In this document: positions 130 to 60,906 of the stretch, in pieces
Numbering within the stretch: position 1 is the stretch's first letter
How the letters are laid out: each line of letters begins with the position of its first letter
Assembly: GCF_001194135.2 (NCBI RefSeq)
Contig: NC_068987.1
Location: 4,601,743 to 4,665,742, forward strand
Source of the DNA: Octopus bimaculoides
Lineage: Eukaryota
Direction: 5' to 3'
Length of the DNA: 64,000 bases
Program-made: the position numbers and the translations under genes
The notes under the pieces: model-generated
The model's database searches: none
Seen by the model: only the letters and a program-made list of their open reading frames with translations
Told to the model about the DNA's origin: nothing

Positions 130-980
130 TCTCTTTCCACTTTGCAAATGAATAACACAATGAGCAGATGATACAGTTTGGCCTTTGACCTCATCACCAC
201 TATCATCATCATCATCATTGATTTGGTGTTGGTTAGTAGAAGGTACAAATGATGTATATGAGAGATTTTGATCTTTAACAGCATGCGGGTTAGTAAGTGA
301 AGAACTTCTGGTTTCCAATAGATGTCCATTATGATATGATTGATGAGGAATAATCAGTTCGTTATTTTCTTTAGATTTAGGTATTATTTTACAAGTGGAT
401 GTTCCGTCTTTTAATCGAGTATTTTCTGGTGTCTGTAAAAAAACTTGTGCAACAGCTGTTTCGTTAATTATGTCTTTTCTTAAATTTTGGCCTGATACAC
501 CTGTTACATCTTTCGAAGGTGGTTTGTAAATCTTCTGAGCTAATGCAGATGATATGCTTTCTCTAGCAGTTTGTTTGAGATCAACTTCAGGAGGCCATCT
601 CCCTCGCACATCCGTTTTGTAATCTAGTCGCTGCGTAATGGACCCGTTTCCATTTACACCTGATGACCAACTTGTCAATTTTTCTGGACGCTTTGCCATA
701 GAAATCTGTGCAGTTTGAGCATGAGGCCATCTTTTGACAACACTTTTCTGGCTAACAAGAACAGCTGGCTTTGTTTCAGGTTCACAATGTGGGGAAGAAT
801 CAGTTTCAGAATCGTAGCGTTTGGAAATATCATGTATCTTGGTAGCTTTTTCTGGTGGCCATTTATTGCTAACTTTGACTGCCTTTTCTCTTACTCTCAG
901 ACCAGAATTATTGTTGTTATTATTCTTTGTGGTTATATCGTTGTTGTTGTTGTTATAATAACGATTATTATCACTATTAA

Positions 981-1014
<34 letters not shown>

Positions 1015-1218
1015 GGACAAATTTTTATTTTTAGAATTAGTAAGATCTTCGAGAATGGAAGTGTTTTTAACTCCACTTTCAGTTGACAGTTTATTGTGGT
1101 AGGATTGGATCTTAGTTTTGCTATTGTTTAAGGAACCTTCTAGTTTAGATTTATAGTCTTTTATTGAAACACTGTTAATTAGGGTTCGTGATGGCGCTTT
1201 AAAGGAAGAAATTAAACC
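130..1218 (-). CDS. Coding exon 10 of 10 found (363 codons, phase 0/0), low-complexity N/S/K-rich; gene continues beyond the left edge
   Basis: Acceptor tttacttttcccag|GGT at 1218 and donor AGA|GTAAGT at 130. I translated the frame from 1218 (GLISSFKAPSRT...) without a stop into the supplied ORF 13..1020, ending LQSGKR. Length 1089 nt is divisible by 3. Confidence 0.8.
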
Positions 1219-5265: not shown

Positions 5266-5478
5266 CCTTTCTACTCTAGGCACAAGGCCTGAAATTTGGG
5301 GGAGGAGGATAGTCGATTACATTGACCCCAGTGTTTCACTGGTACTTAATTTAATGACCCTGAAAGGATCAAAGGCAAAGTTGGCCTCAGCAGCATTTGA
5401 ACTCAGAACATAGCGGCAGACAAAATACCACTAAGCATTTCGCCCAGCCTGCTAACAATTCTGCTAGATCAATGCCCT
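5019..5478 (-). mobile_element. Two tandem SINE family A copies (about 5019-5205 and 5266-5478) embedded in (AAT)n
   Basis: Two same-orientation copies, each flanked by AAT microsatellite. Confidence 0.85.
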
Positions 5479-5481
5479 AAC

Positions 5482-7944: not shown

Positions 7945-8312
7945 TTGTCTAGTTTACTTTGGCAAAACTGAGGAGAATCTTCATAACCTCGTAATCAAAT
8001 CTTATTCCAAATCATTGAAATTACTGGAAGAACACCAGATTCCATATTGGTGAAATCTAAACTATTTTAGCACCCCTTTAAGAATGAAAAATAATGTCAG
8101 CTTCTCCAAGTTCTGAATTGAAAGACATGAGACTCTAATGTAAATAGTTCCTTCAAAATAAATGTTCCTTCTATATAATAACAGAACCTGTTTAGCAAAT
8201 ACATTCAACTAAATATATCAAAAAAACATCTAAGTATTTGGAACTCAAGTTAGAATGAAGGCAAATATTGTTGCAATAATGAAAAGAAATTTATATTTTT
8301 TAATTTGCTCAC

Positions 8313-8726
8313 CCTTGTTTCAGTTAGGTTTGAAGATTTATAAGTATAATCATCGTTGGCAACCTTTGGGTACATATTATTCAGTATTGTTGCTGAAAGT
8401 TGCCCAGGATCTGCCAGAAGATTTGCAGTACTTACTCGTATTTCAGCACAAGATTCAAAGGTGTCTTTTACAGGAGAGCAAAAAGAGTTATAAGAATTTC
8501 CATTGTGGTTTTGAAGTTCCAATGACGTGTCGGATTTCTCTGGTCCTTCTTCGAAGTCGCTATCACAATCATCCTCCTCCTCATCGTCATCATCTTTTTC
8601 ATCATCCCCATCGTCCTCATTATTACAGCCATATGTGATGTCTCTTTTAATGTTATAATGATATGAAACGGGGTCACAACCGTTTGATGTCTCCTTGGTA
8701 ACCAGTTGTTTGTAACTTGCATTAAT
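8313..8726 (-). CDS. Coding exon 7 (138 codons, INASYKQLV...acidic D/E tract...NLTETR, phase 0/0)
   Basis: Acceptor ttgcatgttaacag|ATT, donor AGG|GTGAGC, 414 nt open frame that includes supplied ORF 8250..8522. Confidence 0.75.
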
Positions 8727-8959
8727 CTGTTAACATGCAATAAATAAACATGCAAGAAATAACATGCTATGATAACAAACAGACAAACAAAAGCAAAACA
8801 AAGCAGAAATCAATCAACAAAAAACACAACAAACATGGATTAACATGAAGATTAATCCATCTCATGCAGGATTAACAAAAGAAAAAGATGAAAACGTCTA
8901 TAAAAGTGAAGAAAGCTGTAAGAGGGATTAGATCCTCTTTAAACTAAACCTATTCTTTT

Positions 8960-10855: not shown

Positions 10856-11457
10856 GTACTTAATAATATATGTGACTGCACACATACAGAGTGTTGCTTC
10901 TTTGATGAGGCTAGAAGGGAAGTAGACAAATAAGGTGCTAACGACTAGTTTTTATCACAGTCAGGTGGTGCTAGCTCTCTTCTATATCAGTGTATTAATA
11001 AATCCAATCAAGATTGCACAAGCAGAAGGTAAAACATACCTGACATTTAATATTTGTTATACCTGTGTAGAAGAACGCTTGAAATGTGGCAAAGATTATT
11101 ATTATCATCACTATCTCTTTTATTACTGAGACATATATATATATATATATTTATATATATTCTTTATTTCTGGATTAACAAGGTTACCAATGGTTTCATG
11201 TCAAGAAGAATTTCTTGACAATTATCTAGCCTGCCCCTTGCGAAAGTTGGTGCTTGTCTCCCACAAATAAAGATTTTCCAATACGGTGTTGATCAGTCAT
11301 TCTCATTGTTTAATATTTTAACATGTATATATATTTGTTTGTTTGATTTTTTTTAATGATAAGTTGTAATAAAAGCAATTTAACATTAAACTGGAGAATT
11401 ACACAATATATATACATATATATATATTTTTTTTTTTTGTATTTTTAGTATTTTTAC

Positions 11458-11546
11458 AAGAGGGGTGATAGTGACTTCGAAATTTTAGCCTGCTAGCCTA
11501 CATCAGACTGTCAGGCAGAAACTTCGAAGTCATTGTTGCTATTCTT
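11458..11546 (+). ncRNA. pri-miRNA-like hairpin (candidate microRNA)
   Basis: Bulge-free 35-position stem (11458-11492 with 11512-11546): 25 Watson-Crick pairs, 7 G.U, 3 mismatches, 19-nt loop. No expression data. Confidence 0.5.
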
Positions 11547-11560
11547 TATGTAAAAGTATA

Positions 11561-11611
<51 letters not shown>

Positions 11612-13599
11612 AAGCATACACATACGCTATTTCATTTCTATGGTTGTTCTTCAGTGCTTTGGTCTAGCGTTCTCTTCGGTACTTTCATTGAGATGAAGAA
11701 CATGAGAACAGTTCTAAAATGTTTACAAGACAATGTGTGTGTGTGACAAGATCCCTTTTTAATTTAATGTCAATGATAAAATCTGATTTCCTAATTAAAA
11801 TACCGAAATATTGGCATATGTAGAATGGGAAAATTACTATTGGTGCCATTTTCATCGTGACCAATATGTAGCACTAACCTTAATTTGGACACAAAGTCCT
11901 TTACACTTTAGCATTTAAACTAGTCTGACCCAGGCCAAAATTCTGTCTTATGCTTAAATTGGCTAGATCCAGCCTCTCACACCTACTCTACAATGTTATT
12001 CTAAAAATATACAATCATGTCATTGAAGAAATAAGCTTCACATTTGACAGACTAATCAGAATGATCAAAAGTTAAAGTACAAGCTGCAGCAATGGACGCA
12101 ATAGATAAGAAATTGCACAGTTTGAACCTTTCTTAGGGACCATGCTGTTATCCCATCAAAAAACATAGTTGTTATTTAACCCCAAGTGAGGTCTGATTGA
12201 GCAGAGTTATGATTAAAAACATTCCAAACATGACAATTCCATCTATTTAGCATGATGGAATGTGTCCTAACTTTCTTAAGATTGTAAGAGGTGCAATTTG
12301 GTGGAATTTAGCTGCTATTTCTAGAAGCTCAAGCATTTGCATAGAGGCACCCACATTGTTTAAAGCATGGATGTTGCTGTTCATTTTATTCTTTTGTCTC
12401 AAGAAGGCAGTCCTGATAAAGCAGAGCTTCAGTCAAGGGCTTTCCAGATGTAACCATTTTGAATTTTTTTTTTTTTTAGACATAGTCTCCCTATAGATAT
12501 ACTACAACTCAGACAACACTAATTTCTGTTTCTTTCTTTCTTTTAAGGCAGTAAGATGTAATTCAAGTATTTGGATAGAAATGTTGTCTGCTATTTCTAG
12601 CAAGCCAAGTAACCATAAAGAGGATATCCATTGACTTGAGATATATAGATGCATAAAAACAAGGTTTTGAGAAAATAAAAAATAACTAAATATTGGAAAT
12701 GATATCAGTTTTTTGGTTCAAGAATTGGACAGTTTTTTAACTAATGCCAAAATAAGGGATATTGTGACAGAAAAATAAAATGGTAGACAGACTAATCAAT
12801 GTTAACGAGAAGATAATCTACGTTTATGAAAACTTAAAATTTGAGATGAAATATTTAAAATATAATGAAGTAGAAAAAGAAAAATGTTGCAAGAGGGTGA
12901 GACAAACCCATAGCTTTTTATTGTAAATGCTTTTGTTTTAACTCTAAGATTTTGAATTTCTTTACCACAAACAAGTGTTCTTCAAATAAATCATACACAA
13001 AAAAAAAAAATCCAAAAACACAAATGTACAAAGAACTAAATAACATTCAAATATTGTTTTAGACATCATCGGCAAAGTGGAATTGTATAAAGACACAAAC
13101 ATGATTTTGTGGCCTTTTTTTTTTTTTTTAATACCTCGTTGTCAAAGATGTAGCTTTAAAGAATGATGTTTTGAAAACATATAATTTATTTATTTATGTT
13201 ACAAAAATAAAACTAAACTAATTTTCCTTTTTTTTTTTTTTTTGAAGACCAAATTGTTGTCTTTATTTTATAAAATAAATATAAAATTAATTTGAGATAT
13301 GTTTCTAAATTTTTAGATTAGAAAACATATTCATAAAAAGAATAGTTTTAATATATTAAAAATGCTAAATAAAAAGAGAAATAACAATATATTACACACA
13401 CACACACATTTATAGATACACATACATACATATAAACTATTTATTTAGCATGTTTGTTAACATATTAAAACATTTTATTTATTTAAATATTCAAATGAGC
13501 AAAAGTAAAAATATATTGATAAATATAAATAGATTCAAATTAATCAAAATCGAAAGTTAAGTAATTGTATTTAAGGAGAATATTACTAAAACAATTTGT

Positions 13600-22609: not shown

Positions 22610-23699
22610 TATGAACAGTAGTAACACTACTCAGAGTTTAATAATCTGGCAGTTATTCTATAAAGAGGATTAAGACATTTACAATATTGATATTTCATTC
22701 CTTCTTGATTAAAATAGTTTGTAGCCATTGTACTAATGTTGTTGTTGTTATTGAGTTCCAAGCCATCAGATTCAACAGATCTTTGCTCAAAAGCTTCCCA
22801 GGTGTGGTTATCATATCTTTATTTCTGTCACAGTGCAACTTGGACTACATCATTCAATGTCGCCTACCCTTTTTTTTAAAGACGGTAGAATGTGATTATT
22901 GAGAGACATTTGGCAGTTATTTCTAGCAAAATCAGTGACCACATAAAGCACCCTTGTGGTGCCTGAATAACTCAGTCAGTAGAACAACAGCTCAGCCATC
23001 ATCATACTACACACACACACAAAATGGGCTTCAGTACAGTTTCCATCAATCAAATTCACTCACGAGGCAATGTTCTGTTCAGGGCTATTTGTAGAAGACG
23101 TTTGCCCGAGGTACCATGTGGTTCCAAAGCAAGCTTCATCTGCTAATCTTTCATGTTTAACATGTACAATACATTAATCTACTTAGCGATTTTCTCATAT
23201 CCCTACTTTCACAAGAATGGTGAGAAGGTTTAACGCCTGTTTTCCAAGCTGTCATGGGTTGGATGGTTTGACAGGGGCTAGCCAGCTGGAGAGCTGCACC
23301 AGGCTCCAATTGTCTTGGTTTCGACAGCTGGATGCCCTTCCTAATGCCAACCACTTTACAGAGAGTCCTGGGTGCTATTTTACGTGGCACCATCACAAGT
23401 GCTTTGCATATTAAACCAGAAGCACATACTTTATCATGTTTATATGGATTAATTCATGTTGGCAACAACTACATTTAAGCAAATTAGGGCCGATAACATT
23501 AAGCAGAGGATATAAGAGTATCAGGGAACTTTTGATTCTAAGCAGAAAATTTTAAAGATAACCATTTGCAAAAGAGAAAACCATACCGAAAGCAACAGAG
23601 AACAGGAATGGAAAGAACGAGAGAAACAGAGAGAGATAGAGAGAGACAGAGAGAGAAAAGGAAGAAAGTAGCTCAACTTTTGAATTCCCAATTACTTAC

Positions 23700-23879
23700 C
23701 CTTTTGCGTCTTTCTTCTGCTTCTCGTTTCTTGCGTTCTTCTTCCTCTTTCTTCTGCTGTTCGTCTTCTGCCTGTCGTCTTACAGCTTCTTCGGCAGCAC
23801 GTTTTTCTTCTTTGATCTTTCTTTGAGCCTCTTCTGCTTCTCGGCGTTCCCTTTCCTCAGCTTCCTTCTTTCGGCGTTC
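23700..23879 (-). CDS. Coding exon 6 (60 codons), ER/K-rich charged single-alpha-helix-type segment (ERRKKEAEERERREAEE...EAEERRKR)
   Basis: Acceptor gattgcatttag|GAA, donor AGG|GTAAGT, 180 nt, strong E/R/K periodicity. Confidence 0.92.
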
Positions 23880-36908: not shown

Positions 36909-37784
36909 ATATATATGTGTGTGTGTGTGTGTGTAAGTCTTGGGATCTTGATATTTATTATTATTTTGCCTGGGAGGGGCAGGCAATTTTTATTTGTCTA
37001 GTGGCTGTAGTGAACGAGGTAGTATGGTGGACCCGTTTGAAAGGACTAGACAGACACTTTCCTCTCTGGCCAAGCCCTCATCAACATTTTTCAAGTTTCA
37101 CTTGAAAAGGAAGTTGAGGGTGGAGAGGGAAGTGTTGCCTTGTAGCAAGTTTGTTGAAAGGTGAGTGAATGCTGGGAGAATGGTCAGTGTGAAAGGACCA
37201 ACTCTGAGCTTGCACCTATAAAAAGGGAATCAAAGGAGAAGGGCTCATGCTTTGTTGTTCATGCACCCATGGCTTTTGTGGGTTTTCCACAAGGACCTTA
37301 AAGCGCCTAATAACAGTATACTAACTCTTGTTCAGACAGACACACGCATTGAAGAAGTAGCTGTTGGTCATTAACTGGAGGTAGATGTTGAGTGCACATG
37401 CATTTAGAAGGTGTGCATTGCATATGCACACATTAATTTTAGAATTTGGGTATTGGACACAAACAGATTTAGGAAACAGGTTTTGGGTATAAACATATTC
37501 AGGAACTGGGTGTTGAACACACACATATTCAGGAGGAAAGGTGGATGTTTGGGAAACTTAATCATAAAAGGGTGGAAACTTAATCATAAAAATGGTATCA
37601 ATAATAATAATAACAATAATAAACTGAAATGATAAACAAAAACTGAAATAAGGAAGGAAAAAGTAAGAGAAAAAAAAAGAGAAGAAAATTAAAATTGAAA
37701 GAAAATTATTTTGAGAAGTCTGTATTTTGAAAGAGTTTCAGAGAAAAAGTTAAAATAACCATCAATGGCAACAGTTTGTTGGAG

Positions 37785-48240: not shown

Positions 48241-48532
48241 ATTGTTATATTGCTCTAATTCAGTTCTGTTCTGACTAGGTATTGAGCTGAGTTTGATGAC
48301 TTTGCCTTGTTTAGTAAATATATTTGTATTTTGTTAAGTTGCACAAATAATAGTTCTTCTAATTTGCATACTGCTTTGTCTTGCACGTGGATTTTTTGGT
48401 TCTGCTTTAATCAGCGTGTATTTTAGAATATATATTGCTCGCGTGTTCACTCCATTATTTGTTAGTTGGCTGGTATTCAAATAATGTAATAATTCTGTAT
48501 TAAAACATAACAATAGTATATATGTATTATAG

Positions 48533-48840
48533 TGGAGGCGCAATGGCCCAGTGGTTAGGGCAGCGGACTCGCGGTCGGAGGATCGTGGTTTCGATTCCCA
48601 GACCGGGCGTTGTGTGTGTTTATTGAGCGAAAACACCTAAAGCTTCACAAGGCTCTGGCAGGGGATGGTGGTGACCCCTGTTGTACTCTTTCGCCCCAAC
48701 TTTCTCTCACTCTTTCTCCCTGTTTCTTGAGTAACACTGCGATGGACTGGTATCCCATCCAGCTGGGGGGGAACACATACGTCATAGAAACCGGGAAACC
48801 GGGCCCATGAGCCTGGCTAGGCTTTGAAAGGGTGACGTTT
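48533..48840 (+). mobile_element. Young tRNA-derived SINE with a V-SINE-like central motif
   Basis: A box TGGCCCAGTGG, B box GGTTTCGATTCC, CpGs retained, motif CTGCGATGGACTGGTATCCCATCCAG, perfect 14-bp TSD TATATGTATTATAG (48519-48532 / 48841-48854). Confidence 0.9.
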
Positions 48841-57632: not shown

Positions 57633-57688
57633 AAAAGAAAAAAAAATTAAATAAACAACAAAAAAATCATGCAGAAAACATGTTTTAA

Positions 57689-57888
57689 CCCTTTAGCATT
57701 TAAACCAGCCATATTGGGCCCAGATATTCTACCTGTTTTATGCTCAAACTGGCCAAATCCGGCCTTTCACATTTGTCCTACAATGTTATATGAATAATCA
57801 CATCATGTATGAGATAATGGATGATTAATTAAAATCAATGTGAATAAATAAGCTATAGATTTGGCAAAGTAATATGAATGCTAAAAGG
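57689..57888. mobile_element. piggyBac-type MITE
   Basis: TTAA|CCCTTTAGCATT...AATGCTAAAAGG|TTAA; a decayed relative lies at about 11903-12075. Confidence 0.85.
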
Positions 57889-59920: not shown

Positions 59921-60274
59921 CAATGGTTCTCAACCAGGGTCCATATACGACCCTTAAGGGTCCATATATGACCCTTAAGGGGTCATTGTTAAAAATTTAT
60001 CTCCAAGAAATTGGTTATACTTCTTGGCTATGCTGGAGTACTACCTTGAAGTTCAGGAGTTCTCAACCAGGACCCATATAACCCTCAGGGGTCAATATAA
60101 GTTTTCATTGTTAAACCTCATGTGCAATAAACTAGTTATACTTCTACGATATAAAAAAAATATAAAAATTTTTTTTTACACAATTCCTAATAACATCTAA
60201 TTATAATTTTTAACGTGGGTGTGTCCTTTGGAGTTAAGTAGGAATCAATGCGCAAAAATGGTTGAGAATTTCTG
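59921..60274. mobile_element. Charlie/hAT-like MITE with a duplicated left end
   Basis: Two left TIRs (CAATGGTTCTCAACC at 59921, CAGGAGTTCTCAACC at 60054) and one right TIR (GGTTGAGAATTTCTG ending 60274). Confidence 0.65.
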
Positions 60275-60456: not shown

Positions 60457-60906
60457 CAGCGCTTCTTAAACTATGGGTCGCAACCCCATTTGGGGTCATG
60501 AAGTGAAATGCTGGGGTCGCAAAATGCTGAGGTTGCGAAAATTAAATTCAAACACTTGAATTTCAGCTTATATGTCATTTATGTCTCTATTGCCCACAAA
60601 GGGCTAAACATAGAGGGGACAAACAAGGACAGAGGGATTAAGTCGATTACATCGACCCCAGTGCATAACTGGTACTTATTTAATCGACCCCAAAAGGATG
60701 AAAGGCAAAGTCAACCTCGGCGGAATTTGAACGCAGAACATAACGAAATACCGCCAAGCATTTTGCCCGGTGGGCCAACGTTTCTGCCAGCTCACCGCCT
60801 TTTCAGCTTATATGTTATTTCCCAAACACATATTTAATACCTGGGGTCAGGAAAAATCTCTTAATGAAAAATGGGGTCATGAATGAAAGACGTTTAAGAA
60901 GCACTG
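60457..60906. mobile_element. hAT-type MITE containing a nested SINE
   Basis: TIRs CAGCGCTTCTTAAAC / GTTTAAGAAGCACTG (14/15), 8-bp flanks CTTTAAAC / CTGAAAAC (6/8). Confidence 0.85.
60581..60800 (-). mobile_element. tRNA-derived SINE (family A) nested in the MITE
   Basis: 20-bp TSD TTTCAGCTTATATGT(C/T)ATTT at 60561-60580 / 60801-60820; body shared with several other copies. Confidence 0.9.

What the first reader, a model, noticed from the sequence alone, without database searches (positions are those of the whole stretch)
11458..11546. Strand-asymmetric pri-miRNA-like hairpin, antisense to the host gene
Seen: a 35-position stem with no bulges (25 Watson-Crick, 7 G.U, 3 mismatches) and a 19-nt loop, in single-stranded-looking T/A-rich flanks. 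On the minus strand the 7 G.U pairs become mismatches, so only the plus-strand RNA folds well; a DNA foldback relic would not be expected to show this. Established: Microprocessor substrates have stems of about 35 bp cut about 11 bp from the base, and coleoid cephalopods have many lineage-specific miRNA families. Inference: 5p arm near UAGUGACUUCGAAAUUUUAGCC, 3p arm near GGCAGAAACUUCGAAGUCAUUG. I do not recognise either seed, and I see no basal UG or CNNC motif.
Basis: partly seen in the sequence, partly recalled or inferred. Interest (0 to 1): 0.74.

Follow-up and report, generated by a model that had tools for sequence, protein, structure and literature searches.

The report
Ordinary intronic inverted repeat, octopus troponin gene
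The hairpin is real and unusual for this window, but it looks like an ordinary short inverted repeat inside a long intron of an Octopus bimaculoides troponin-domain gene, and nothing testable here shows that it is a microRNA gene.

Summary
Positions 11458-11546 form a bulge-free 35-position stem (25 Watson-Crick, 7 G.U, 3 mismatches) with a 19-nt loop. No shuffle folds as well. It is the only non-microsatellite stem of this quality in the window.

The window is Octopus bimaculoides. The hairpin lies in a ~15 kb intron of a troponin-domain gene on the minus strand, so the better-folding strand is antisense, as stated.

Two supporting arguments fail:
- The flanks are not single-stranded. Pairing continues for 10 more pairs, to 11448-11559, so the repeat is about 45 positions long.
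- The strand asymmetry is not distinctive. The minus strand folds at -34.6 kcal/mol (z -6.4, against -6.2 for plus). A 4.8 kcal/mol strand difference occurs in 35% of 89-nt windows here. The 7:1 excess of G.U over A.C gives P = 0.07 two-sided, before allowing for selection.

There is no Rfam match, no UG, UGU or CNNC motif, no second copy in the window, and no shared seed with the published octopus miRNA target tables.

Small-RNA reads, genome-wide copy number and conservation in other octopuses could not be tested. The most likely reading is a non-genic inverted repeat (about 0.85). A young, unannotated miRNA remains possible (about 0.06).

The parts
11458..11546 (+). The hairpin as reported: 35-position bulge-free stem with a 19-nt loop (11493-11511).
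   Evidence: 25 WC, 7 G.U, 3 mismatches; MFE -39.4 kcal/mol, z -6.2.
11448..11559 (.). Full extent of the inverted repeat: about 45 paired positions per arm, with a 3-nt bulge at 11547-11549.
   Evidence: fold of 11428-11576 at -48.3 kcal/mol, paired from 11448 to 11559; a 10-pair flank extension arises in 1.4% of shuffles; the minus strand folds at -38.8, z -7.4.
11472..11492 (.). Inner 5' arm (stem positions 15-35). This is the well-preserved DNA-level core of the repeat; it pairs with 11512-11532.
   Evidence: 18 WC, 1 G.U and 2 mismatches over 21 positions. This core also forms the stem on the minus strand.
11512..11532 (.). Inner 3' arm, partner of 11472-11492.
11458..11471 (+). Outer 5' arm (stem positions 1-14). 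It pairs with 11533-11546 largely through wobble: 7 WC, 6 G.U, 1 mismatch. Only 7 of 14 positions are complementary at the DNA level.
   Evidence: Changed positions are 7 of 14 in the outer part against 3 of 21 in the inner part; Fisher P = 0.053.
11408..11437 (.). (TA)n followed by a T12 run immediately upstream of the repeat.
11564..11611 (.). (GT)24 microsatellite immediately downstream. It gives a spurious sub-threshold Rfam mir-297 match.
   Evidence: 35.9 bits against a gathering score of 90.
8274..8729 (-). Host-gene exon downstream of the intron (INASYKQL...TETR). Contains the 16/17 match to the 5' arm at 8550-8566.
23694..23879 (-). Host-gene exon upstream of the intron (Glu/Lys/Arg-rich troponin-T-like N-terminal region).

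Best explanation
This is a non-genic short inverted repeat (a foldback) in a long intron rich in microsatellites and repeats. The intron belongs to the Octopus bimaculoides troponin-domain gene.

Shown: arms of about 45 nt around a 19-nt spacer. The inner 21 positions are a well-preserved DNA-level palindrome. The outer part is half-decayed and stays paired on the plus strand through G.T wobble.

Inferred: it arose at the DNA level. The likely routes are a short inverted duplication, such as a replication template switch that copies a stretch in reverse complement, or the remnant of a small foldback or MITE-like insertion. It has since drifted by point substitution: 8 transition-type and 2 transversion-type differences over 35 positions.

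It will fold in any transcript that contains it. The transcript known to exist is the host pre-mRNA, which carries the minus-strand version (-34.6 to -38.8 kcal/mol). It has no dedicated function and is not a miRNA gene. At most it is raw material from which one could evolve.
For: 1. The repeat is real and exceeds chance on both strands equally. For the 89-nt hairpin, z is -6.2 (plus) and -6.35 (minus). With flanks, z is -5.6 and -7.4. That is what a DNA-level palindrome gives.
2. Pairing extends about 10 bp beyond the 35-position module, P = 0.014 by flank shuffling. The element is therefore not sized to the Microprocessor ruler and has no clean basal single-stranded junction.
3. The strand difference in energy is ordinary: 35% of 89-nt windows differ by at least 4.8 kcal/mol, sd 5.5. 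Other unique hairpins in the window show similar differences: 37040-37150 at -44.0/-38.7 and 23240-23360 at -42.9/-36.3.
4. There is no Rfam family at gathering score, and nothing for the hairpin in a local E-value scan.
5. None of 12 candidate seed-match 7-mers, covering 6 registers per arm, occurs as a miRNA response element of an annotated octopus miRNA in the stored parts of Data S2/S3 of PMC9699675. The only occurrences are 'Non-seed kmer' controls. The arm sequences are absent from all held supplements and from the paper library.
6. Base rates are low. O. bimaculoides has 162 annotated miRNA genes. In primates, more than 6,000 suitable template-switch hairpins yielded at least 18 miRNA genes. 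Of the intragenic ones, 81 of 99 are sense to the host. Here the better strand is antisense.
7. No basal UG, apical UGU/GUG or CNNC motif is present in the expected registers (read).
Against: 1. Wobble pairs outnumber A.C mismatches on the plus strand: 7:1, binomial two-sided P = 0.07, or 9:1 if the flank extension is counted. Differences also concentrate in the lower stem (Fisher P = 0.053). Both patterns would fit RNA-level constraint on the plus strand.
2. It is the only non-microsatellite bulge-free stem of this quality in 60 kb. Its 35-position module and 19-nt loop match pri-miRNA dimensions.
3. The published octopus annotation deliberately left out species-specific miRNAs and is described as an underestimate.
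4. No direct evidence of origin was obtained: no outgroup sequence, no target-site duplication, and no other copies.
Confidence: 0.85

Rival explanations
1. It is a young miRNA specific to the species or genus, or a weak 'background' Drosha/Dicer substrate. It would be transcribed from the plus strand, antisense to the troponin-domain gene. It would be cut about 11 bp above a basal junction to give products near UAGUGACUUCGAAAUUUUAGCC (5p) and CAGAAACUUCGAAGUCAUUGUU (3p).
For: The stem has 35 positions without bulges, the loop is 19 nt, and the fold is strong. It is unique in the window by the strict stem criterion. G.U pairs outnumber A.C on the plus strand 7:1 and sit mainly in the lower stem. 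A G-A mismatch flanked by G.U pairs lies 6 nt below the proposed 5p cut, which loosely recalls the basal mismatched-GHG position. Octopuses have gained many lineage-specific miRNAs, and the published set excludes species-specific ones. Template-switch hairpins in introns are a documented source of new miRNAs.
Against: There is no Rfam match. No seed is shared with annotated octopus miRNAs in the stored tables. UG, UGU/GUG and CNNC are absent. The flanks pair for 10 more bp, so the basal junction is ill-defined. The orientation is antisense to the host, so it needs its own promoter; only 13 of 99 intragenic template-switch miRNAs in human are antisense, and 10 of those lie near a transposable-element promoter. 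The prior is very low: hundreds of miRNA genes against what are probably thousands of comparable hairpins in a genome of about 2.7 Gb (genome size from my own knowledge).
Confidence: 0.06
2. It is a copy, or remnant, of a dispersed miniature inverted-repeat or foldback transposable element. It would be one of many copies in the genome, with the arms being the terminal inverted repeats. This differs from the best explanation only in origin. Functionally it is equally inert, so its probability is counted within the 0.85.
For: The whole element is essentially two arms of about 45 nt and a short spacer, a typical MITE or foldback layout. The genome is rich in repeats. Three SINE-like elements with a tRNA-like fold lie in this window. 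The other strong unique hairpin, at 37051-37140, overlaps a stretch similar to sequence outside the window, so hairpin-bearing repeats exist here.
Against: There is no second copy or fragment in 64 kb at up to 3 mismatches in 20 nt, or by short-word BLAST. No recognisable target-site duplication flanks either the 35- or the 45-position boundary (read). Two scans of metagenome contigs found no copy. Those collections are not expected to hold cephalopod DNA, so this last point is weak.
Confidence: 0.25
3. It is a hairpin-RNA or cis-antisense regulator derived from, and targeting, the host gene. In this reading the 3' arm is antisense to the alternative exon at 8550-8566, as in Drosophila hpRNAs or young plant MIR genes formed by inverted duplication of their targets.
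For: The 5' arm sequence GTGATAGTGACTTCGAA matches the sense strand of the host exon at 8566-8550 (GTGATAGCGACTTCGAA) at 16 of 17 positions, 2.9 kb away. The 3' arm is therefore complementary to that mRNA segment.
Against: BLAST gives E = 0.087 within the window alone. Similarity stops abruptly on both sides: 1 of 7 and 2 of 11 matching bases in the adjoining arm positions (read). An inverted duplication of the exon should match along the whole arm. There is no evidence of plus-strand transcription.
Confidence: 0.02

Closest known systems
Hairpins generated by replication template-switch mutations (Monttinen, Frilander and Loytynoja 2023, PMC10710096)
   Same: A short inverted repeat in an intron, with a near-perfect core of about 20 nt. 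It has later point changes that include wobble pairs in the basal stem, and it is the right size for a pri-miRNA.
   Different: The origin could not be inferred here because no outgroup sequence was available. The documented miRNA-forming cases are mostly sense to their host gene (81 of 99); this one folds best on the antisense strand. Only about 0.3% of such hairpins became miRNA genes in primates.
Canonical animal miRNA precursors, including the lineage-specific octopus families of Zolotarov et al. 2022 (PMC9699675)
   Same: About 35 paired positions, no bulges, an apical loop longer than 10 nt, and strong thermodynamic stability.
   Different: - No family match in Rfam.
- No shared seed in the stored octopus target tables.
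- No UG, UGU or CNNC motifs.
- Flanks that pair instead of being single-stranded.
- No expression or conservation evidence.
MITEs and foldback elements
   Same: The element consists almost entirely of two inverted arms and a short spacer, in an AT-rich, repeat-rich intron.
   Different: There is no target-site duplication and no other copy in the window. Genome-wide copy number is unknown.

Membership tests
Canonical animal miRNA gene (MirGeneDB-style criteria) | An imperfect hairpin with at least 16 complementary nucleotides between the arms and a stem of about 35 bp. | tested here: met
   32 of 35 positions are paired, with no bulges.
Canonical animal miRNA gene (MirGeneDB-style criteria) | Single-stranded basal flanks that define the junction from which Microprocessor measures about 11 bp. 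| tested here: not met
   The flanks pair for 10 further bp after a 3-nt bulge, so the stem runs 11448-11559. Probability by chance is 0.014.
Canonical animal miRNA gene (MirGeneDB-style criteria) | Reads of 20-26 nt from both arms, with homogeneous 5' ends and 2-nt 3' overhangs. | not testable with these tools
Canonical animal miRNA gene (MirGeneDB-style criteria) | Transcription of the strand that carries the hairpin. | not testable with these tools
   Only the orientation is known: the better-folding strand is antisense to the host gene.
Canonical animal miRNA gene (MirGeneDB-style criteria) | Primary-sequence processing motifs: basal UG, apical UGU/GUG, 3' CNNC. These support membership but are not obligatory. 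| tested here: not met
   Read. Positions -14/-13 are UA. The 5p loop junction reads CUG. There is no C in the 16 nt after the stem and no CNNC.
Known miRNA families (Rfam 15; octopus families of PMC9699675) | Sequence and structure match to a family model, or a shared seed. | tested here: not met
   No Rfam hit at gathering score. The best local hit on the hairpin is mir-3927 on the minus strand: 18 bits, E 0.97. None of 12 seed-match registers is listed for any annotated miRNA. The stored tables are truncated and MirGeneDB itself was not searchable.
Conserved miRNA | An orthologous hairpin in related species, with arms conserved more than the loop. | not testable with these tools
   The O. 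sinensis orthologous gene spans 145.5 kb and no DNA was returned for it. No other collection holds cephalopod DNA.
MITE / foldback transposable element | Terminal inverted repeats that make up most of the element. | tested here: met
MITE / foldback transposable element | A target-site duplication flanking the element. | tested here: not met
   No direct repeat flanks either boundary (read). TA dinucleotides next to 11458 and 11546 are uninformative in sequence this TA-rich.
MITE / foldback transposable element | Many dispersed copies in the genome. | tested here: inconclusive
   No other copy in 64 kb. This excludes only very high copy numbers. The genome could not be searched.
Template-switch-generated inverted repeat | An ancestral or outgroup sequence that lacks the repeat, with the new arm explained as a reverse-complement copy of adjacent sequence. 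| not testable with these tools
   No outgroup DNA is available.

The most novel reading that the evidence does not exclude
The hairpin is a young miRNA or hairpin-siRNA gene specific to Octopus bimaculoides or to the genus. It would be transcribed antisense within the troponin-domain gene, and its 3' arm is near-complementary (16 of 17) to an alternative exon of that same gene. That would make it an animal example of a small-RNA locus acting in cis on its own host transcript.
Probability: 0.03. Interest if true: 0.55.

Novelty: new member of a known kind. Interest (0 to 1): 0.15.

Why it matters
As it stands it matters little. Short inverted repeats of this kind are common by-products of replication errors and transposons in large, repeat-rich genomes, and only a tiny fraction become miRNA genes.

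If small-RNA data showed precise processing, it would add one young antisense-intronic miRNA to the unusually large coleoid repertoire. It would also be a possible snapshot of de novo miRNA birth. That interest would be modest unless the complementarity to the host exon proved functional.

There is a methodological point that applies to other findings. An excess of G.U pairs on one strand, and a few kcal/mol of strand difference, do not separate RNA genes from DNA palindromes in a genome with strong local composition skews.

Tried and rejected
1. Other copies in the window: a pattern search with 3 mismatches and short-word BLAST found none.
2. Rfam at gathering score for the whole window, and at E-value threshold locally: nothing for the hairpin. 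The mir-297 hit is the (GT)n repeat.
3. Literature:
- The arm sequences do not occur in the full-text library or in the held supplements of PMC9699675.
- The seed-match look-ups were negative.
- Data S1 and S4 of that paper, likely the miRNA sequences, are not held.
4. Orthologous DNA:
- Two window ORFs were not on record.
- O. sinensis isoforms P0003 and P0004 and O. bimaculoides P0002 were not on record.
- The longest O. sinensis isoform, P0015, was found, but its gene range is 145.5 kb, so no DNA was returned.
5. Two metagenome scans with hairpin patterns gave 0 hits.
6. Pfam scan of 10 stop-free segments gave nothing.
7. tRNA or SINE identity of the hairpin: ARAGORN found no tRNA in the window, and the hairpin has no similarity to the SINE-like elements.
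8. Exon-derived inverted duplication: rejected as the main reading because similarity is limited to 17 nt.
9. Pol III product: considered and rejected because the 5' arm contains TTTT and a T12 run lies just upstream.

Full report

Yes. Reading 11458-11546 and pairing position i with position 90-i gives 25 Watson-Crick pairs, 7 G.U pairs and 3 mismatches (G-A, A-C, A-A). There are no bulges and the loop is 19 nt, exactly as reported.

RNAfold finds this structure as both the MFE and the centroid, at -39.4 kcal/mol. Dinucleotide shuffles average -19.4 (z -6.2), and 0 of 200 fold as well.

A direct scan of both strands for bulge-free stems of 30 positions with at most 3 mismatches and loops of 3-40 nt found many microsatellite hairpins. 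It found only one locus of normal complexity, and that is this one.

A looser scan by MFE in 90-nt windows found a handful of comparable hairpins outside microsatellites:
- 37051-37140;
- 23261-23350;
- 59941-60030;
- three SINE-like elements with a tRNA-like fold near 5390, 48530 and 60710.

**2.

The flanks are not single-stranded. Folding 11428-11576 extends the stem, after a 3-nt bulge at 11547-11549, by 10 more pairs: GUAUUUUUAC at 11448-11457 with GUAAAAGUAU at 11550-11559. The energy is -48.3 kcal/mol. Shuffling the 20-nt flanks gives an extension that long in only 1.4% of trials.

The inverted repeat is therefore about 45 positions per arm. It is not a 35-bp module bounded by single strands, and a Microprocessor basal junction is not clearly defined.

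Within the 35 positions the repeat is not uniform:
- The inner 21 positions (11472-11492 with 11512-11532) have 18 WC pairs.
- The outer 14 positions have only 7 WC pairs, plus 6 G.U pairs. Fisher P = 0.053 for the difference.

**3. Strand asymmetry**

On the minus strand the same register has 25 WC pairs, 1 G.U and 9 mismatches, so the count is right. It does not carry the weight placed on it, for four reasons:
- The minus strand still folds at -34.6 kcal/mol, z -6.35. With flanks it folds at -38.8, z -7.4, against z -5.6 for the plus strand. Relative to its own composition, the minus strand is at least as exceptional.
- Across 3,965 windows of 89 nt, the plus-minus MFE difference has sd 5.5 kcal/mol, and 35% of windows differ by at least 4.8. 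The difference tracks the G+T fraction (r = -0.62). The hairpin's residual is about 0.7 sd.
- The mismatch spectrum has 8 transition-type and 2 transversion-type differences, which is what neutral decay of a DNA palindrome produces. The only oddity is the 7:1 split between G.U and A.C, binomial two-sided P = 0.07. The split becomes 9:1 if the flank extension is counted, but that extension was itself defined by a fold that allows G.U.
- There is an ascertainment effect. A decayed palindrome whose transitions split evenly would look poor on both strands and would not have been flagged.

I take the wobble excess as weak positive evidence for RNA-level constraint. It is worth a likelihood ratio of a few, not a demonstration.

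**4. Context**

A concatenated query of stop-free segments hit four proteins. Their sequences contain the window's exons verbatim:
- Octopus bimaculoides A0A0L8H1Q7 and XP_014776500.1;
- O. sinensis isoforms carrying Pfam PF00992 (Troponin).

A tblastn search maps the exons on the minus strand at 61144-61028, 52153-52061, 23879-23694, 8729-8274, 5973-5863, 4634-4530, 3016-2948 and 1218-130.

The window is therefore O. bimaculoides. The host is a troponin-T-like gene with many alternative exons. The hairpin lies in the intron of about 15 kb between 23694 and 8729. The better-folding strand is antisense to the host.

The hairpin is sandwiched between (TA)n-T12 at 11408-11437 and (GT)24 at 11564-11611, in a region full of microsatellites. 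No sequence around it is repeated elsewhere in the window, apart from a 100-nt stretch at 11900-11999 that resembles 57685-57789.

**5. Tests against known families**

- Rfam 15 has no match at gathering score anywhere in the window. A permissive local scan gives only a chance-level hit on the hairpin: mir-3927, minus strand, 18 bits, E 0.97. The mir-297 hit is the GT repeat.
- Zolotarov et al. 2022 (PMC9699675) annotated 162 miRNA genes in 138 families in O. bimaculoides, and required a novel miRNA to be present in both octopus species.
- The arm sequences are absent from the held supplements of that paper and from the full-text library.
- I derived the seed-match 7-mers for six start registers on each arm. 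None is listed as a response element of any annotated miRNA in Data S2/S3. The only occurrences are labelled 'Non-seed kmer'.
- These tables are truncated in storage, and MirGeneDB itself could not be queried. This is therefore evidence against membership of the annotated conserved set, not proof.
- Read directly from the sequence, the basal UG, apical UGU/GUG and 3' CNNC motifs are absent in the expected registers. A G-A mismatch flanked by G.U pairs lies 6 nt below the proposed 5p cut and only loosely resembles the mismatched-GHG position.

**6. What could not be tested**

- Small-RNA reads are not available.
- Genome-wide copy number cannot be measured because no cephalopod genome is searchable.
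- Conservation failed at the last step. The longest O. sinensis isoform (XP_036360316.1) is on record, but its gene spans 145.5 kb, above the limit for returning DNA. Other isoforms and window ORFs were not on record.
- Two metagenome scans found nothing, as expected.

**7. Most likely explanation**

This is a DNA-level inverted repeat with no dedicated function. It arose either by a local inverted duplication, such as a replication template switch, or as the remnant of a small foldback or MITE-like insertion. I favour the first slightly, because there is no second copy and no target-site duplication, but this is inference.

Base rates support a non-genic reading:
- In primates, more than 6,000 suitable template-switch hairpins yielded at least 18 miRNA genes.
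- Intragenic ones are overwhelmingly sense to the host (81 of 99). Most of the few antisense ones lie near a transposon promoter.
- O. bimaculoides has a genome of about 2.7 Gb (my own knowledge). Its 162 annotated miRNA genes are a very small target compared with the number of hairpins implied by even one such stem per several hundred kilobases.

Combining a prior near 1% with the modest positive evidence (dimensions, wobble excess) and the negatives (orientation, paired flanks, no motifs, no family), I put a bona fide processed miRNA at about 6%. The non-genic reading gets about 85%. The rest goes to other roles.

**8. A coincidence worth recording**

The 5' arm (GTGATAGTGACTTCGAA, 11465-11481) matches the sense strand of the next host exon at 8566-8550 (GTGATAGCGACTTCGAA, coding ..CDSDFEE..) at 16 of 17 positions. 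The 3' arm would therefore be antisense to that mRNA.

BLAST gives E = 0.087 within the window, and the similarity ends abruptly on both sides. I treat it as chance. It does define the most novel reading that is not excluded (about 3%).

**9. Verdict**

The feature is real and was accurately described. The miRNA interpretation is unproven and a priori unlikely. It is best filed as an ordinary intronic inverted repeat. Interest is low (0.15). A single mapping of existing small-RNA libraries and a BLAST search against octopus genomes would settle it.

Noticed in passing
window 130-61144, minus strand: The host gene is a troponin-domain (PF00992) gene of Octopus bimaculoides, troponin-T-like, with many alternative exons. 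Its O. sinensis orthologue spans 145.5 kb and has at least 18 isoforms. Automatic names are misleading ('histone-lysine N-methyltransferase H3 lysine-79 specific', 'myb-like protein A', 'bromodomain-containing protein'), presumably because of the Glu/Lys/Arg-rich and Asn-rich low-complexity stretches.
   Followed up: partly
window 130-1218, minus strand: A very large exon of about 363 aa contains an Asn-rich run encoded by an AAT-type microsatellite. It is only about 84.5% identical in protein to O. sinensis, so it evolves fast for a muscle-protein gene.
   Followed up: partly
window 8550-8566 (minus) and 11465-11481 (plus): There is a 16/17 match between the hairpin's 5' arm and the coding sense strand of the next host exon, so the 3' arm is antisense to that mRNA segment. 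E = 0.087 within the window, and the similarity does not extend beyond it.
   Followed up: yes
window 37051-37140, plus strand: This is another strong hairpin of normal complexity: -42.4 to -44 kcal/mol on the plus strand and -38.7 on the minus. It adjoins or overlaps 37126-37215, which is 63% identical in translation to residues 740-769 of the old gene model A0A0L8H1Q7. Those residues do not map to the host-gene exons in this window, so the hairpin may belong to a dispersed repeat.
   Followed up: partly
window ~5390-5480 (minus), 48531-48620 (plus), 60711-60800 (minus): These are SINE-like elements with tRNA-like folds, at -36 to -43 kcal/mol on one strand only. ARAGORN calls none of them a tRNA. 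They account for several of the best-folding windows.
   Followed up: partly
window 11556-11632, plus strand: The (GT)24 microsatellite next to the hairpin gives a sub-threshold Rfam match to mir-297 (35.9 bits against a gathering score of 90, E 5.5e-05) and to SCARNA2. These are low-complexity artefacts.
   Followed up: yes
whole window: The sequence is a draft assembly: 3,651 N in several gaps, about 30% G+C, with very frequent (TA)n, (CA)n/(GT)n and AAT-type microsatellites. Many of these form perfect hairpins stronger than the finding.
   Followed up: yes
tool behaviour: A 262-aa query contained at 100% identity in A0A0L8H1Q7 / XP_014776500.1 returned no hit. A later query that included neighbouring exons found these proteins. 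A negative result from the word-indexed protein search is therefore not reliable for low-complexity eukaryotic exons.
   Followed up: no
window 11900-11999 and 57685-57789: A stretch of about 100 nt, 400 nt downstream of the hairpin, is 72% identical to a second place in the window (E 1.9e-09). It is probably an old dispersed repeat and does not include the hairpin.
   Followed up: no
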